Assembly: GCA_907165135.1 (NCBI GenBank) | Contig: OU015567.1 | Location: forward strand, 14,880,001 to 14,944,000 | Length of the DNA stretch: 64,000 bases | From: Oikopleura dioica | Taxonomy: Eukaryota; Animalia; Chordata | Direction: 5' to 3' | In this document: positions 1,320-50,562 of the stretch, piece after piece | Position numbering within the stretch: position 1 is the stretch's first letter | Layout of the letters: each line of letters begins with the position of its first letter | Position numbers and translations under genes: made by a program | Notes under the pieces: generated by a model | The model's database searches: none | Seen by the model: only the letters and a program-made list of their open reading frames with translations | What the model was told of the DNA's origin: nothing

Positions 1320-3470
1320 GCTCCCCAGTCTTCGAAGTCTTCTGACGATTGGAGACTCTAGAATTGAAGAAAGAAGTGTAGAGATGATCCAGCGGAAGAT
1401 GTCCAATAGGAGTAGAGATGAAAGCGGTGCTGAGCCAAGCGTTTCAATTTGTGATGCGCGTTGAGAAGATCGAACCAAGCGAGTAGAAATTATGCAGTAA
1501 GTTGTCCAAACAAGAAGGTTTACCTTGGTTGGGCACTCATGTTTTGGAACAATGAGTGGCGCGTTAGCGACTTGGTTAGAGCATAGTTCCAGTTGGCTGA
1601 TCAGAACCTGTTGCCAATCAAAGGCGCAACTTTGACGGAGGTTTTGAATATCATCCAGCTCCCCAAACTTTCGGCAAGGCATGAAGTTGGAAGAAGGTTC
1701 TAGATGAAGCAGACGGGCGGTTTCGCATCGCGTCCAGGTAAGCATCCCCAAATACATGTTTCTTCTCCAATGAGCATTTGAAGTCCAGGAAATGTCGACA
1801 TCGACGAGAAGAGTATTTCGGATGATCGTGGCACTTGAATTCTCGCTATTTTCGGACCAGTGCGCGTCCAAAAATTTCGGCGAGCTGAAGCTCTTTTGAG
1901 CCAGAGGCGCTTGGGCGTAGCTACAAAAGCATCAGAAGCAGCAAGGTCGAGCAATTCGCTGTAGCTATCTTCAGATGAAATCGACGAGTCAGCACTTACA
2001 TCAGTTGGCTTTTGCTCGGATTCCTGAGTTGAAGTAGGGTCGGCGGCGTCTCTGTTATGCGACTTTTGAGGAGATTCTGGATCTGGCGAGTTCAACGGGG
2101 AGTGCGTGTGAATCGCGACCAGAAGTTGAAGAGTGGTGTCCGTTTGAGCATCAAGAAGCAGCAATTTCTCCAAAATGCTCGTGGCCAAAGACATCTTCGC
2201 GGCAACAGCAAGAATTAAATCTGCTTCGTGTTGTCGAGTCGAAGGGTGCCACAGAACAAAGACATCATACGCCTCTTTCACCATTGAGGTAAAATCTTCG
2301 ACGCTTTTACGACTGATCAAGTCGTATTTAGATGACGAATCCAAGCAGTTGTAGATTTCCAGACGTTCATCGTGGTTGAGACAAGCCTCACTTACAGATT
2401 CATGAGCGCTTGCGTCGATGGTGCGGCGTGTCAGCCGAATCAACCTTTCACCAACATCGGCGGAAGTAGAGAAAACGGGAGGTAACTCGCGGGAAACGAT
2501 GGCGTCGAGAAGGTCCGATTGAAGTCGACAAGCGTATTTGAAGTCGGCAGTATCGATGAGTTCATCGGGGTGCAGGAGTACGTGAGTCATGAGTGCAGAT
2601 GCGCAGTGAACTTTTGGCGGTGAGCGAAACCAGGCCAAAAATTTTGCCGTTAAGATCGCATCATGAGCAGCAGCGTAGTCGGCGAAAATGGGACGATCAG
2701 CAATTCCAACGGATTTCTTCGCGTTTGAAACCCAGCGGACTTGTGGAAATACTGGTCGGTTTCTTGGGCAATCGTGCGCTGGCGAAAATCAGCGGCGGCA
2801 GAAGAAGAGGCTTTTCTACCTGTGGAGTGCGCTGAAGTTGATTCCAAGTCGAATTACTTCGAGCGGCGCGATTCCGCGTCTATTTCCAGCTCCAGCTGTT
2901 TCGGGCGACGTTGATCAAGTGAAGAGGAGTTCAACAAGGGCGGCGACGAGTTAAAGTTCACCCAGCGAGGCGGGCTAGAAGATAACCAGTCGGGCAGTAC
3001 GTCTCGAGAAGTTTGAGTCGACCAGTGCGGGGCAGTGGCAGAAATGGCGCTTCCTTTGTCGTCAGTGTTGAAGTCGAAGGTGTTGCGAACAGCGCGGTTA
3101 CTGTTGGCCTGGTCGTTGCCGTGATGAAAAGAGCGGTCAAGTGTACACGAGACTTGATTTACCTCAAAGAAGCGCTCAAGTTTTTGAAAAACTATGAGCG
3201 GCGCGTTGTACGCGTCTTTGGGTCGTGACTTTACTAGCAGAAGTCCATCAGCAACAATTCGGTTGGTCCAAGCAGAAGTAGCGGTGTTGGCGGGAGATGT
3301 TGTGATTGCGCGCGGCAGTTGGCGGAATCAGCAACGGCAACGGTTGTTTTTGCCTTGGCGCGCGAAATTTGGGCCAAGTTGACTGTGGTCCGGCGGTCGA
3401 CACGTCAGCAAACAGTCGAAAACAAGGTCGTCTAGGTCCAGAGTTGAGCGGCAGAATTCCAGTTTAGCTT
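1314..3470 (-). pseudogene. Decayed internal reading frame(s) of the LTR element, product unassigned
   Basis: Long open stretches in changing frames: about 158 codons at 3327-2853, the 312-aa ORF 2638-1700, and the 185-aa ORF 1871-1314, which stops inside the 3' LTR. They are interrupted by isolated stops and frame changes. No YxDD, CCHC, HHCC or DDE motif was found. Confidence 0.55.
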
Positions 3471-3750
3471 AACTTGGCGGCAGAATCGATGAAGTCGAAA
3501 CAAGTACCTGCGTTGACCCCGAGTAATAAACTGATCAAGTTTATTTACTCCGTCAGGGGCTTTGTGGTGAGCAAATTCAGGCAGTTCCGAGGTAAAAATC
3601 ACCGTTCGTGGCGGAGCAAGTATCAGCAGAAATCCAGCGGTTCAAAGGTCTCCAGAAGTCTCCCAGATCGCGTAGTGGCCGAGTGAAACCAGGCGATCGA
3701 GCGTGTTACTTATCGTGAAGTAGTCCAGTGTCCGGCGAAAGCAATGAGCA

Positions 3751-3765
3751 CATCTGTTGTCACCA
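3751..3765 (-). promoter_or_regulatory. Primer-binding site of the LTR element (tRNA identity not assigned)
   Basis: Minus strand TGGTGACAACAGATG next to the LTR end; TGG is complementary to the tRNA CCA end. Confidence 0.75.
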
Positions 3766-3767
3766 GT

Positions 3768-3994
3768 TGATAGGTCAAGAATGCCTCCACTCTATTGTGG
3801 TCCTGCTCTGCTCTCTAGTCTAACTGTAGCCTCTAGATAACACAGAAAAGGGTAGTTTAGGTGTTGTATTCAAGTTAGGTGAACACGGACTTGTACACTG
3901 AATTGTGTTATGGTTGCACAGACTGAACGCAGTGGAAAAGCGGCGGGCGCCTCCAGATCTCTATCAGATCTAACGGCTTCTTGCTGACCTAACA
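3768..3994 (-). repeat. 5' LTR
   Basis: Identical to 1093-1319 and followed on the minus strand by AC-TGG (PBS). Confidence 0.95.
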
Positions 3995-45149: not shown

Positions 45150-48100
45150 AATAAAAAGCTATGTAACAAAGGCTATCTTATATTCGCTTTTGATGATGAT
45201 TTATCCTAAATTATGATGAGATAATTGCAGTTGATTATGGATAGACTTTCTTTTCTGAAAAAACTCCGCGAAGACAGTTCGTCTTTGAGATAAAGTCCTT
45301 TGAGATAAGTTCCATAGACGGCTCGCTGATGCTGCTCGGCAAGAGTCTTTTGAAAACAAGAAGAAGCGAGTCAAGAATTGTGAGAAGAAATATTTTCGAA
45401 CGGTGGTTTAATTGCCCGTGCTTCCGGCCACAGTTGGGGCTCAAGGCGACTTGAAATATCAGAAATTATAAAACTGCGCCAAGCAGAAAAATCTTTCGCG
45501 TTGCATCCGGGATGCTTTAGATGGAGAACAGCGCTTCCCTCTCCGTTCTTTAGAACTACTGTAAACAGGCTTTGAACTTGAATTAGATGGGCGCAATTTT
45601 GAAATGTTGAAAAAATGCACTGGAAAGGTCCTTGAGCGACGTGGAGGAAAATGTCGAAAATGACGAGAATAATCGTCGGCCGCAGCTGCGAGGTTCAACG
45701 AAAATCAAAGCGGGAATAATCACGTGACCTTCGTTGGATTAGCCTCACGTGTTTCGCCCATTCTCGGAAGTTGCCTGTCTTCCTTGACCCGCCAGCTAGT
45801 TTAACCGTGATTCTTAAAGAATTACCATTCCGCCAAAAAAGTGAGCAATAATAGTGTTCGAAATCAACCCTTTTTCGTCGTCAAATCCGTTTGGGTAGTG
45901 TTAGATTGGCGGGAAGCAGGATTTAGCGAATCTGAGTCGAGTCGAACTAAAACCAATTAACCGGATTTCACATCATCTAATCTCGCCTGCGATTAATTCT
46001 AAAATCTAATTCTATAGTCCGTTTTAAATTCAAGTTAAGTTGCTGTTCATTTCTATTTATAGCGAAACTGGGGGCTGATTATGTGATCAGATAAATAGGG
46101 CGCTGTATCTTCTACGAAGCCCTGCTTGGTGTGTTTACCAAAAGAGAAAAAGTACTAAGTAGCCGGACATTCCTGCCCGTTCACTTATCTCACGAGAAAA
46201 AGGAGCTGCTTGTCACGATTTTACGAAAAAATTCTACCCGCCTTCGGGTTGATCCCGCAGCAACTCGGCTTGATCTACTTTGAATAATGATCTAATCTTT
46301 CGAAATCATATATATTTTTTTTAATTAATTTATTTGATAACTTTGATTGTGGGGCAGAACAAAGAAAACAAAGTGATTTTAAGGATCTGAATTTTCATTG
46401 GCCGGTAGGCCAAATAGCGCCATCTTATGGGTCTTTCAAAAATGCACTTCCATTTATTTGCCCGTTAAAGAAGGGATCCCCTTATTTTTTTCTTTTGTCC
46501 TTTTTGCGAAAATCTTTCTGGCCCGTCCCAGTTTTTGCTGACAGATTTTGTCGGGCTGAAATACAATTTGCATTTTTCGTGGGTATCGGATCAGCTGACT
46601 CCTGCGGAAGTCACGTTGCATTGGATATTTTTTTGTTGTTCAAAGATTATCAAATCAATCAGCTAAAATTCTTCGGATACTTACTCCTTTTTTGTTTGAA
46701 ATAATTTTTAAGATAAGCTAAAAGACTATTTTGAAAGAGAGAAATCGGACCGTTCCAACCAATTTGGAGGGGAATAACCATAAATTTGCTTTTCAGAGCG
46801 CTAAATAAAGATCATCACGTGGTTTTCCCCACCCTAGAAAAGTGGGTACCGTCAATTTGCCCCCACGTTGTTCACAATCATTTTTCTTGTGTTTTGTTAC
46901 AAAAAATTACAATTGCCAAAATTTTCCCAAAATGAAATAATCAAACAGCTGAAATTTTCGGATGAACTTTCGGTGTTGGAATTCGGGGCATTTTACTGCA
47001 AAGGAAGAGAAATGCTGGGTTACGGCATCGAAAGTACCACAAGCATTTTTGACAATTGAAGGGGTTAAATTTTGGTACTTACAGAGGAATGTTAGGATTA
47101 TCTATTATTTTAAGACGCTGAGAGGCCTCTCTGTCTGAGGGATGTAAAAAAGAGATTAATAAGATGGGATTGTGTCTGGAACCGACAAAAAAAATTTTGA
47201 TAAATATTGCGTTGAAATTTTCAACCAATCAGAAGCCCGGATTCAGCAAACCGGCAAATCAGAAGCCGAGTAGACGCCCACGCAAAATTTGTCGAAATTT
47301 TTTTGTCGGTTCAAGACACCACCCCAATAAAATAGAGGGTACCCTTAGGAAGACCCAACACTTATTGGGGGTCTCCATTTTAACGGGTTTAAAATTTCTC
47401 ACAAAAAATTTCAGAGATATTAAAGAATGCGTTAAAAAGTGACCCCCTTCAGAAAAATGAAATCCGTTAAAATGGACACCCCTCAGAATCTTTTCCCGTT
47501 GAAATGGGACCCCAATTTTATTATGAAAACGTGTGCACAAGCCTGAAGAATTCTGATTCCAGGGACACATTCTTGGATTCATTTTAATATTCTCCGTCGA
47601 TTGAATTTTCCAAAACTCGCCAGTTGCATTGAGTGTTTCCACGACAGTTTTATTCCCGAGAGAAACAGTAAATCTTCTTTTTGGAAAAAATGTTTGGCTA
47701 TGTTCTAAACTTATGTCGAAAAGAGAGAGTCTTGAATTTTCTCAAAGTGGAAGCGAAAATGTGAAGAGAAGAGTTTAACACATTGTGGAACATTTCTCGC
47801 AATTCAATAAAAATAACTGGCTTCAAAACACTAATTCGATCATGCAGAATTTTTTTTCATAAAAATGACGCTTCGGGTTAAAATGATCAATCGAATTCGA
47901 GTTCTGCATAAATTTTATTTTAAATTTTAGTTCAAGTTCTTCCCCAAAATTTTATTTTCTCTGAAATGATTTCTAAGATAAGAAACGCAGTAAAAAGTAC
48001 TGCCAATTTGACAGTGTAAACTCTGCATTGTTTGATGAAGCTTATCGACCCTAGCACCCGTATCTCGGGTTCCAAACAAAGCAGTTTCTATTTGCCACGT

Positions 48101-48155
48101 TCCTTCCTTAGGAAAAACTCAATGTTCCAGTCGTATTTTAGAGATTCTGAAAGCC

Positions 48156-49585
48156 ATGATCTGCAAGCCTTTGTACATCGCAAAACCCGAGGAAGGGGTC
48201 CGAAAACTCGTCAAAATCGCCTCCAAGAGCGTCAGAACAAATTTGAGCGTCGAGCAGACTTTTGAATACTGCCAGACCTTGTGGCAGATTGCTGAAGACG
48301 CGAGAACGCAAAATGATGAAGAATACGAGTATGTGAATAAATGGGCAATGAACAATACGATTGTCAATTTGAAAATGAAACTTGAAAATACAAATCAAGG
48401 AATTGAAAATCACGTTTGTATCGGACGATTTGGGCCGACAATGGATCGTCTTGAAGTTCTCCGAAAATCCCTGGATAAAAGATACAAGGAGAAAATAGAA
48501 AGACCAACGACCGGACAAACTCGTCCAGATGTTCTTCCGCCGATTTCTCTAACTCCTCGGGCTCCATGCGAGCGAGAAACCTGCAAAAATTTACAACAAC
48601 TTTATCATGATTTAATTAAGCAAAATCAAGAAATATGCAAAGATAAAAACGATGCACTCGAAATGATGCGACAAAGAAACGGAATGCGTAGAAAAACTAA
48701 ACCCGATCACCCTAGCAATAATCGAATTAATCAACTGGAAAAAGAGAAAAAAGATCATCTTTTGACAATACAAGCCTTGCAAGCTACAATCGCGAATCAA
48801 CAAAGACAGATAGATTCTGCTATAGGAAACGACGAAAGCAAGAAATTCAAAGATTTAGTGGAGAAGCAAGGGGAGAGAATCGAAGAACTAGAAAAAGAAG
48901 TTAACAACAAACAAAGAAGAATGGAGATTTATGCCCGTGAAAATGCTGAAAAGGATAAGAGAATTTTATCATGTGAACATATCCTCAAAGATCTTACAGA
49001 AGGACAGAAGAGACAATCTCAACAAAGTGAAAAAAGAATAACTGAACTTCAAAAACTTCTGAGAGAAGAAAATCGGGCATTTACGGATTGCGAGAAGCGT
49101 TTATTTGATGCAAGTCGTGCGCTTGCTGTATTCAGAAATCAAGCGCAAAAAGAAGACAATATTCATTTGAAAACTATAAGAAATCGTGACGAATCAATCA
49201 AAATTCTGAAAAAAAGAATCAACAAATTAGAATTTGATCTTGACTGTAGAAACGAACATGGTGCAAATGAAGATGTTCACGAATTACTAGAAAAACTGCA
49301 AAGACTAGAGGCAATCGAAGAAAAGCTTCTGTGCCAAATCTGCTTCGAGTAAGTTGAATCAACAAAACGTTCTATTAGCAAATCTCCGTTTTCATGGTGA
49401 GCTGCGTTGGTTAATTTTTCTTCAGTGATTACAATGATAAGGAGCACTACTCTGCGACCCTGTCCACGTGTGGGCACGTGTTTGGAAAAACTTGCATTGC
49501 AGAAGCTCTCAGGAGTCAGCAACGATGTCCAATTTGCAACAAAAACGCCACCGCGAGAAATATATTGCGAATTTTTCTTGTGTAA
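48156..49585 (+). CDS. Putative RING E3 ligase, about 450 aa: USP8-dimerisation-like N-terminus + coiled coil + C3HGC3 RING (exons 48156-49348, 49426-49585)
   Basis: A 77-nt GT-AG intron splits the RING: CQICFDDYNDKEHYSATLSTCGHVFGKTCIAEALRSQQRCPICNK. About 230 aa of coiled coil precede it. AATAAA lies 3 nt after the stop. An acceptor-like TTTTAG lies 15 nt upstream of the ATG, so an upstream exon or trans-splicing is possible. Confidence 0.88.
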
Positions 49586-50562
49586 CAAATAAATAGCAAA
49601 AAAGGGATGAACACGTGAACAGTTACATATCACTCGACTCCTCCCTTACTTATCAACAGATGAGTCTAACGGCCGAATTGGCAAACAGCGGTGACTATCT
49701 CAAGATTTTTTGTAAACTCTCCTAGGAAATTTAAAGCGCCCGAATTTTGTGTCACGTTTTTGATAATGCTCATTTCAATTAATTATTTGTTGTTTCGGAG
49801 TTGTTTGGGCCGACTTTTTTCTTTTATTTTTTAGACGAACTTTTGAGTCTTGAAATACGATTTTGGAAGACACGGCAAAGGGAAACTAGAGCAATCAGAA
49901 AGGGTGGATAATTGGAGATATTTCCGGTGGAAGCGAGATTGAAGTGATCTTCTTTTTGGACTGAAAGCTGAAAGGCCGATCCGATTCTTGGCCAAATGTC
50001 GTCTCTTCCGATTGAGCCTGTTAGTCAGGCTCATTACTTCCGCTCCAGGGATTTTATCAACGTTTTTGCCCGTTTGAAATTGCCTTATTGTTCAACCCTC
50101 TTTTTTGGCTGCGAGAAAATTGATGACGAGCAAAAAGCCCTACCGAATTAGTCGCGGATAAATCAAATGTAAAAATAATCCGGAGAGCTTGGAGCGCTGA
50201 TTCATAACACGACTTTTAAGCGCTATAAATATCCTTTTCCCCCAAGCTTACTCGCTCTAAACAGTCTTATGCAACATTACTTTACTGTATGCATGTTGTT
50301 AGTACACTGCCCCGGCCTAGTCAGCCTTGGCGACTTCTATCAAGTGTTGAGAAAAGCGTAAAATTGCCGATTGTATAAATTATTCAAAATTGTCCCCAGC
50401 CAACCGGTTGGTTTTGTGAAAGCAGCGCGGTTGGAATTCGAAATTTCCATCAGCAACAGAGCCCATTTAATTAGACTCATGGTAATTGATCTAATCACTC
50501 ATAGAAATAAAAATTACCCATCAAGTAATTTAACTAAAATTACTTTTTAAAGAAATTCAAGA

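What the first reader, a model, noticed from the sequence alone, without database searches (positions are those of the whole stretch)
48156..49585. Deubiquitinase-type USP8/AMSH N-terminal domain fused to a RING E3 ligase
Seen: residues about 12-112 read ASKSV...YCQTLWQIAEDARTQNDEEYEYV...FGPTMDRLEVLRKSLDKRYKE. These align by eye with the USP8 dimerisation domain (...KIFKTAEECRLDRDEERAYVLY...LGP...AERLSESLKLRYEE). A long coiled coil follows, then a spliced C-terminal RING with CGHVFGxxC, the Gly-for-Cys variant found in RFWD3. Known: this MIT-like domain normally sits at the N-terminus of the endosomal deubiquitinases USP8 and AMSH/STAMBP and binds ESCRT-III CHMP proteins. Inference: a targeting module from ubiquitin erasers has been attached to a ubiquitin writer. 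That could be an ESCRT-recruited E3 or a ligase that heterodimerises with and antagonises USP8. I know of no described protein with this architecture.
Basis: partly seen in the sequence, partly recalled or inferred. Interest (0 to 1): 0.78.

Follow-up and report, generated by a model that had tools for sequence, protein, structure and literature searches.

The report
USP8-type MIT domain on RING ligase
A two-exon gene of the planktonic tunicate Oikopleura dioica encodes a 450-residue protein that joins the N-terminal ESCRT-binding type of domain otherwise carried by the deubiquitinases USP8 and AMSH to a long helical rod and an RFWD3-type RING finger, a combination for which I found no relative outside Oikopleura.

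Summary
Exon 1 (48156-49348), a 77-nt GT..AG intron and exon 2 (49426-49585) give exactly the public 450-aa Oikopleura dioica protein chr2.g8195. Residues 4-112 match Pfam USP8_dimer above its cutoff when scanned alone. They are 34% identical to the first exon of a genuine USP8 gene, and a small profile of them finds human USP8 first among solved structures. They fold into a helical bundle whose best structural matches are AMSH and USP8 MIT domains. Residues about 140-400 are predicted helical. The RING has Gly at the fifth ligand position plus a co-varying upstream His, as in proteins that carry the RFWD3 WD40 domain.

An exhaustive search of 1.8 billion proteins found no other protein with both ends. 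A Bergen-lineage O. dioica contig does hold the same pieces in the same order, annotated there as two genes. O. dioica also has several small coiled-coil plus RFWD3-type RING proteins, and a RING-less relative of the N-domain exists. This looks like lineage-specific domain shuffling.

Function is inferred only: an ESCRT-III-recruited E3, or binding to other MIM-like motifs. Expression was not shown, because no reads were laid in four RNA runs. I rate it a new domain combination of known parts, of moderate interest.

The parts
48156..49348 (+). Exon 1 (residues 1-397 plus two bases of codon 398). One uninterrupted reading frame holds the N-domain, the helical region and the first CxxC of the RING.
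48165..48491 (+). USP8/AMSH-type extended MIT domain (residues 4-112).
   Evidence: Pfam PF08969 26.8 bits. 34% identity to a USP8 first exon. Profile A1 finds USP8 2a9u/8y9a first in the PDB, E 0.0014. AF2 model pLDDT 75, best structural matches AMSH Z 11.3/11.0 and USP8 Z 9.3.
48573..49331 (+). Long alpha-helical, presumably coiled-coil region (residues about 140-392).
   Evidence: Single-sequence AF2 secondary structure; composition.
49332..49348 (+). First RING ligand pair C393-x2-C396 (CQIC), at the end of exon 1.
49349..49425 (+). Intron of 77 nt, GTAAGT...TTCTTCAG. It sits at the same place in the RING as the intron of the Bergen-lineage gene.
49426..49585 (+). Exon 2, the rest of the RING: H405, C413-G-H415, G418 at the Cys5 position, C421, C432-x2-C435, then the tail ...NILRIFLV. 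Stop at 49583-49585.
49588..49593 (+). AATAAA, a likely polyadenylation signal 3 nt after the stop.
   Evidence: Read from the sequence; not tested.
48136..48141 (+). TTTTAG 14 nt before the ATG, a possible (trans-)splice acceptor.
   Evidence: Read from the sequence; untested.

Best explanation
This is an intact, lineage-restricted Oikopleura gene for a RING-type ubiquitin ligase. Its substrate- or site-targeting module is a USP8/AMSH-type extended MIT domain.

Shown here:
- The gene structure.
- The identity of the two end domains.
- The helical middle part.
- The same order of pieces in a second O. dioica lineage.

Inferred:
- The roughly 260-residue helical region forms a parallel coiled-coil dimer that pairs two RINGs.
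- The RFWD3-type RING still binds two zinc ions, with His405 standing in for the missing fifth Cys ligand (Gly418), and recruits an E2~ubiquitin.
- The MIT domain docks on MIM helices. The most likely partners are the C-terminal tails of polymerised ESCRT-III subunits (CHMP1/2/3/4), so that ubiquitin is written on ESCRT-III or nearby cargo at endosomes or the midbody, where USP8 and AMSH erase it.
- The gene probably arose when a copy of the 5' part of a USP8-like gene was joined to a member of an Oikopleura expansion of small coiled-coil plus RFWD3-type RING genes.
For: Gene model:
- It equals public protein P0001.
- The N-terminus and C-terminus coincide with those of homologues.
- The N-domain, the coil and the first CxxC lie in one ORF.

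N-domain:
- Pfam USP8_dimer is above its cutoff on residues 1-125.
- phmmer against 1.84 billion proteins hits P0003 at E 2.8e-11.
- P0003 itself scores 33.7 bits on USP8_dimer. It is the first exon of a gene with WW and UCH (86.8 bits) pieces.
- BLASTP gives 34% identity over 112 aa.
- The profile search of the PDB puts USP8 first.
- Foldseek's best natural-protein matches are STAMBP/AMSH and USP8 (ranks 1, 3-5 and 7-10; probability 0.84-0.99, TM about 0.5-0.58).
- VIA-align Z is 11.3 and 11.0 over 115-117 residues for AMSH, ahead of core MIT domains.
- The best TM-score by query (0.69, row 2 of the list) in the Atlas structure search is a JAB + USP8_dimer cluster.

RING:
- 58 hits share Gly at the Cys5 position.
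- 57 of 60 such RINGs have His 7-9 residues before Cys3, against 14 of 106 controls.
- 6 of 10 long hits carry WD40_RFWD3.

Conservation:
- Bergen contig L002 has colinear matches to residues 15-102, 92-135 and 369-449, and the same RING intron position.

Literature:
- The USP8 MIT domain binds MIM1-type motifs of CHMP1B, CHMP2A/B and CHMP4A/B and is needed for endosomal association (PMC12057046, PMC6033466, PMC9477494).
- CHMP1B is ubiquitinated and is deubiquitinated by USP8 (PMC6033466).
Against: - No transcript evidence: 0 reads were laid in four RNA runs of the species label. This is not a test, because nothing shows that the same lineage is in those runs.
- The Pfam match is only just above its cutoff and falls below it (22.0 bits) when the whole of exon 1 is scored.
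- Z of 9-11 is within the range that helical bundles reach by chance, according to the tool's own note.
- Foldseek E-values are weak, 0.13-1.
- No binding, ligase activity or localisation was tested.
- Groove residues for MIM binding were not evaluated.
- The OKI and Bergen copies share only about 27-36% identity, so they may be paralogues.
- The family evolves fast, so a conserved cellular role is not assured.
Confidence: 0.55

Rival explanations
1. The architecture is real, but the N-domain does not read ESCRT-III. It would serve as a self-association module, as a USP8-binding module, or as a binder of other MIM-like short linear motifs. The ligase would then act in a pathway unrelated to endosomal sorting.
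For: Pfam names the domain for the crystal dimer of USP8. The USP8 MIT domain also binds non-ESCRT peptides with a degenerate [DE][LIF]x{2,3}R[FYIL]xxL[LV] motif (PMC12057046). Sequence identity to USP8 and AMSH structures is only 15-22%. A RING-less relative made of the N-domain plus coil exists.
Against: Full-length USP8 is reported monomeric in solution (PMC12057046). Most tested human MIT domains bind some ESCRT-III tail, although a non-binding class exists, and AMSH and USP8 bind several (PMC9477494). The coil already offers a dimerisation device.
Confidence: 0.27
2. This is a young chimeric gene that is not expressed or has no selected function: a by-product of the very fast gene turnover and genome scrambling of O. 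dioica.
For: No RNA reads were laid. There is only one database protein and no orthologue was found by word searches. The locus in the Bergen assembly is interrupted by repeats and an assembly gap and is annotated as two genes.
Against: The 450-codon frame is intact, with a canonical intron, a stop and AATAAA. All RING ligands of the RFWD3 type are kept. The same order of pieces is kept in a lineage whose copy is only about 30% identical, which argues for long retention.
Confidence: 0.12
3. This is an annotation artefact: two neighbouring genes (N-domain plus coil, and coil plus RING) wrongly merged.
For: Both halves exist as separate proteins elsewhere: P0002 without a RING, and P0004, P0005 and P0014 with only coil plus RING.
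Against: Residues 1-397, from the N-domain to the first CxxC of the RING, are one uninterrupted ORF with no internal stop. The only splice lies inside the RING, at a position shared with P0005's gene.
Confidence: 0.03

Closest known systems
USP8 (UBPY) N-terminal MIT / 'USP8 dimerisation' domain (PF08969; PDB 2A9U)
   Same: N-terminal position, length of about 110 residues and a five-helix layout. The closest sequence relatives of residues 1-116 are USP8 first exons (34% identity). Human USP8 is the top PDB hit of the profile.
   Different: No rhodanese, WW-like or USP catalytic domain follows. A coiled coil and a RING follow instead. This is a ubiquitin writer, not an eraser.
AMSH/STAMBP MIT domain (PDB 2XZE, 9LE4)
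   Same: Best structural match of the predicted N-domain (Z 11.0-11.3, 115-117 residues aligned), including the helix before the three-helix MIT core.
   Different: 15-16% identity, and no JAMM domain. Binding of CHMP3 or other tails was not tested.
RFWD3 (FANCW) RING
   Same: Gly at the fifth zinc-ligand position, an upstream His, the CGHxFG signature and a CPxCNKxA...I..ha tail (h = hydrophobic, a = aromatic; here ILRIF). Many of the best RING hits carry the RFWD3 WD40 domain.
   Different: The RING is at the C-terminus rather than before a coiled coil and WD40. No WD40_RFWD3 domain is present, so there is no reason to infer RPA binding or DNA-repair function.
Small coiled-coil plus C-terminal RFWD3-type RING proteins of O. 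dioica (OKI chr2.g4599, chr1.g998, chr1.g1799, chr1.g523, PAR.g11062; Bergen CBY12930, CBY39586)
   Same: Coil followed by the same RING type ending the protein. The RING intron position is shared with CBY39586.
   Different: They are 100-210 aa long and lack the N-terminal MIT-type domain. Their functions are unknown.
BRE1/RNF20-RNF40 and other coiled-coil, C-terminal-RING dimeric E3s
   Same: The overall plan of a long coil plus a C-terminal RING. BRE1 RINGs are among the PDB hits (E 3e-6).
   Different: No BRE1 domain match. The RING is of a different subtype, and the N-terminal domain is different.

Membership tests
USP8_dimer / extended MIT domain (PF08969) | Match to the family profile at or above Pfam's gathering score | tested here: met
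   26.8 bits against 24.6 on residues 1-125, covering profile positions 4-113 of 114. It scores only 22.0 bits when all of exon 1 is scored.
USP8_dimer / extended MIT domain (PF08969) | Helical-bundle fold like the USP8 and AMSH N-domains | tested here: met
   AF2 with 4 sequences gives pLDDT 75 and pTM 0.68. AMSH Z 11.3 and 11.0, USP8 Z 9.3, Vps4 MIT Z 9.6. Foldseek TM about 0.57. The Z range is not beyond what helical bundles can reach by chance.
USP8_dimer / extended MIT domain (PF08969) | Binding of MIM helices of ESCRT-III | not testable with these tools
   No multimer prediction or assay was available. No MIM1-like motif occurs within the protein itself.
USP8 or AMSH orthologue | C-terminal deubiquitinase domain (UCH/USP or JAMM) | tested here: not met
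   The Pfam scan shows only RING models after the N-domain. The protein ends 15 residues after the last Cys.
Canonical RING finger (C3HC4 / RING-H2) | Eight Cys/His zinc ligands in cross-brace spacing | tested here: not met
   Seven are present: C393, C396, C413, H415, C421, C432 and C435. The fifth position is Gly418. RING profiles still match (zf-RING_2 37.8 bits).
RFWD3-type RING | Gly at the fifth ligand position with the CGHxFG signature and a conserved His 7-9 residues before Cys3 | tested here: met
   H405...C413-G-H-V-F-G418. 57 of 60 Gly-type RINGs among the hits have this His, against 14 of 106 Cys/His-type RINGs.
RFWD3 orthologue | WD40_RFWD3 propeller (PF23419) after the RING and coiled coil | tested here: not met
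   There is no WD40 match and the RING is C-terminal. True RFWD3-like hits have it, for example P0072 at 261 bits and P0148 at 275 bits.
BRE1 family | BRE1 domain (PF08647) in the coil | tested here: not met
   No such match at E up to 10. The Atlas likeness to BRE1 clusters scores 0.86-0.87, below its 0.9 lead threshold.

The most novel reading that the evidence does not exclude
This would be the first ubiquitin ligase that uses an MIT domain to read ESCRT-III polymers: a dedicated writer placed at the sites where USP8 and AMSH erase ubiquitin. It would offer a natural handle on how ESCRT-III subunits such as CHMP1B become ubiquitinated.
Probability: 0.35. Interest if true: 0.65.

Novelty: new variant of a known kind. 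Interest (0 to 1): 0.47.

Why it matters
MIT domains are the adaptors that bring enzymes to ESCRT-III filaments: ATPases, kinases, proteases and deubiquitinases. No ubiquitin ligase is among the human MIT proteins surveyed in PMC9477494. ESCRT-III subunits are nevertheless ubiquitinated and are deubiquitinated by USP8 (PMC6033466). A natural MIT-coil-RING protein would show that evolution can place the writer under the same address label as the erasers. It would also give a compact reagent for testing what ubiquitin does on ESCRT-III.

The locus is also a clean example of domain shuffling in a very fast-evolving chordate genome. Finally, the survey of hits documents a His that co-varies with the Gly substitution in RFWD3-type RINGs. 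That bears on how this RING subtype binds zinc.

Tried and rejected
- **RNA evidence.** That is no test of expression, because nothing shows that the Okinawa lineage is in those runs.
- **Word-index protein searches.** Searches with exon 1, with residues 1-130 and with alignment A2 returned only the protein itself and P0003.
- **Single-sequence phmmer of residues 1-125 against PDB sequences.** It gave no USP8 or AMSH hit; the best was a designed repeat protein at E 0.011. Only the 4-sequence profile found USP8.
- **ESM Atlas.** The search by features gave generic RING and BRE1-like clusters below the 0.9 lead threshold for the whole protein, and nothing for residues 1-125.
- **Full-length alignment A3.** It was meant to support a better AF2 model, but it placed the N-domain rows under the C-terminal part, so I did not fold it. 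The full-length model is single-sequence and poor outside the helices (pLDDT 55).
- **Maximum-likelihood tree of 60 Gly-type RINGs.** It left the position of this protein unresolved: 59 columns, 32 of 55 inner branches open.
- **Synteny between the window and the Bergen contig.** Only the gene's own pieces matched.
- **Self-scan for MIM1-like motifs.** None found.
- **Considered and rejected:** an RFWD3 orthologue (no WD40), BRE1 (no BRE1 domain), TRIM (no B-box, and the RING is C-terminal), and a merger of two genes (single ORF).

Full report
**What is in the sequence**

The + strand holds an ORF at 48156..49352 (398 aa). Reading the DNA, a GTAAGT donor starts at 49349 and a TTCTTCAG acceptor ends at 49425. 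The split codon GA|T gives Asp, and exon 2 runs in frame to TAA at 49583-85. AATAAA follows at 49588-93. TTTTAG lies 14 nt before the ATG, and in-frame stops lie further upstream.

A word-index search with exon 1 returned one protein, P0001. It is 450 aa, 100% identical, and named Oidioi.mRNA.OKI2018_I69.chr2.g8195 of Oikopleura dioica. Its sequence reads ...CQICFDDYNDKEHYS... across the junction. The public annotation therefore uses the same splice.

Wherever a full-length query was needed I used the database protein P0001 by its id.

**The N-terminal domain**

- Pfam: USP8_dimer (PF08969) scores 26.8 bits (cutoff 24.6, E 6e-6) on residues 1-125 and covers profile positions 4-113 of 114. Scored within the whole of exon 1 it reaches 22.0 bits, below the cutoff.
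- Exhaustive phmmer: a run of P0001 against 1.84 billion representatives found only two proteins that match the N-terminal part. They are P0002 (E 5e-18, 39%, residues 3-163) and P0003 (E 2.8e-11, 34%, residues 5-116).
- P0003 is a real USP8 exon. It scores 33.7 bits on USP8_dimer. On metagenomic contig L003 it is the first coding piece of a compact gene whose later pieces match WW (30 bits) and UCH (86.8 bits).
- Pairwise BLASTP gives 38 of 112 identities, starting at LYIAKPEEGVRKL / LYLAKPDEGVKKL.
- PDB by sequence: a 4-sequence profile (A1) puts human USP8 N-domain entries 8y9a and 2a9u first, at E 0.0014. The single sequence had not found them.
- Predicted fold: AF2 on A1 gave five helices with mean pLDDT 75 and pTM 0.68.
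- Foldseek ranks STAMBP/AMSH MIT (9le4, 2xze) and USP8 (2a9u) as the best natural proteins (probability 0.84-0.99, TM about 0.5-0.58, E only 0.13-1.1), interleaved with two chains of a de novo designed protein; Vps4 MIT domains follow.
- VIA-align gives Z 11.3 and 11.0 over 115-117 residues for AMSH, 9.6 for Vps4 MIT over 82 residues, and 9.3 for USP8.
- In the Atlas structure search the best TM-score (0.69 by query, second row of the list) belongs to a JAB + USP8_dimer cluster.

Each line is modest on its own, but they agree. Residues about 4-115 are a USP8/AMSH-type extended MIT domain, nearer to USP8 by sequence.

**The middle part**

Single-sequence AF2 predicts helices 140-177, 186-221, 225-368 and 372-400, with pLDDT 70-89 over about 190-310. 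Residues 201-392 contain no proline and are 42% E/K/R/Q. "Coiled coil" is therefore a reasonable reading, but it is unproven.

**The RING**

Exon 2 alone matches zf-RING_2 (37.8 bits) and other RING models. It also matches RNF4, RING2/BMI1 and BRE1 RINGs in the PDB.

Ligands C393, C396, C413, H415, C421, C432 and C435 are present. The fifth position is Gly418.

Among the 150 best hits of the exhaustive search, 58 RINGs have this Gly. Six of ten long N-terminal-RING hits that I scanned carry the RFWD3 WD40 domain, with scores up to 275 bits.

A His lies 7-9 residues before Cys3 in 57 of 60 Gly-type RINGs, against 14 of 106 Cys/His-type RINGs from the same list. Here it is H405. I infer that this His replaces the lost ligand, so the RING is probably competent. 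This is an inference.

A tree of the Gly-type RINGs did not resolve where this protein sits.

**Relatives and origin**

No hit carries both ends. A protein that matched both the N-domain (20 bits or more) and the RING (35 bits or more) would have ranked among the first ten, and I inspected all of those.

O. dioica has several small proteins made of a coil plus a C-terminal RFWD3-type RING:
- Okinawa: chr2.g4599, chr1.g998, chr1.g1799, chr1.g523, PAR.g11062.
- Bergen: CBY12930, CBY39586.

CBY39586 lies on Bergen contig FN655581 (L002). On that contig, tblastn with P0001 finds colinear matches on one strand:
- residues 15-102 at 1224-1472 (E 3.5e-7),
- residues 92-135 at 2128-2271,
- residues 369-449 at 3606-3842.

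The RING intron sits at the same codon position. That locus is annotated as two genes of 280 and 104 aa, and its first coding piece is not annotated. The same architecture therefore exists in a second, very divergent O. dioica lineage (27-36% identity). Whether it is an orthologue or a paralogue is open.

P0002 and P0151 (254 aa, Logan contigs L001 and L004) have the N-domain and a coil but end at a stop. A convergent gene begins 37 nt later, and there is no RING within 340 nt. They are a RING-less relative.

Together these points fit domain shuffling within larvaceans: a USP8-derived 5' module joined to a coil-RING gene.

**Expression**

Twenty-four runs with the species label were offered, and none is shown to hold the stretch. 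Laying three oligo-dT RNA runs and one single-cell run on 47700-50000 gave zero reads. By the tool's own wording that is no test. Transcription and the splice remain unconfirmed by reads.

**How it probably works**

From the literature:
- The USP8 MIT domain binds MIM1-type helices of CHMP1B, CHMP2A/B and CHMP4A/B, and this is needed for endosomal association.
- AMSH MIT binds 10 of 12 human ESCRT-III tails.
- CHMP1B is ubiquitinated and is deubiquitinated by USP8.
- The word "ligase" does not occur in the survey of human MIT proteins.
- Full-length USP8 is monomeric in solution.

These points come from PMC9477494, PMC12057046 and PMC6033466.

My best reading is a coiled-coil dimeric RING E3 that its MIT domain addresses to ESCRT-III assemblies, or failing that to other MIM-like motifs. 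The heterodimer-with-USP8 idea is less likely. None of this was tested.

**Verdict**

The architecture is real at the DNA level, because N-domain, coil and first CxxC share one ORF, so a merger artefact is very unlikely. The kind is a new combination of known domains and is confined, so far, to Oikopleura. Function is inferred. Interest is moderate.

Noticed in passing
L002:1212-3845 (Bergen O. dioica FN655581.1): The locus with the same N-domain, coil and RING order is annotated as two separate genes (2179-3021 and 3487-3845). Its first coding piece (1212-1496) is unannotated. There is an assembly gap at 1612-1710, and tandem repeats of about 45 nt at 3022-3400 lie in presumed introns.
   Followed up: partly
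L001:240-1004 and L004:36-800: A 254-aa relative with the USP8-type N-domain and a coil but no RING. It ends at a stop, and a convergent gene begins 37 nt downstream. The source organism is unknown (Logan contigs).
   Followed up: partly
hits (P0004-P0150): In RINGs with Gly at the fifth ligand position (RFWD3 type), a His 7-9 residues before Cys3 is nearly universal: 57 of 60, against 14 of 106 in ordinary RINGs of the same list. This suggests a ligand swap.
   Followed up: partly
O. dioica proteins P0004, P0007, P0014, P0018, P0027 (Okinawa) and P0005, P0030 (Bergen): O. dioica has an expansion of small (100-210 aa) proteins made of a coiled coil plus a C-terminal RFWD3-type RING. One well-supported RING clade also holds 13 metagenomic sequences.
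   Followed up: partly
L005:22-2077: Two ORFs overlap in different frames: 22-1071 (Pro-rich) and 1043-2077 (coil plus RFWD3-type RING). They may be one gene with a small intron or a contig frameshift.
   Followed up: no
L003:2163-5217: A compact genuine USP8 gene (USP8_dimer, WW, UCH pieces) on a metagenomic contig. Its N-domain is the closest non-paralogous relative of the one studied here. The organism is unknown but the gene density is like a larvacean's.
   Followed up: partly
window:44269-44835 (+): A 188-aa coiled-coil ORF with only a weak, sub-threshold likeness to KASH_CCD (24 bits, cutoff 43).
   Followed up: no
window:47164-47642: Overlapping ORFs on both strands both contain the words CLEPTKK. 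This may be an inverted repeat or a mobile element just upstream of the gene.
   Followed up: no
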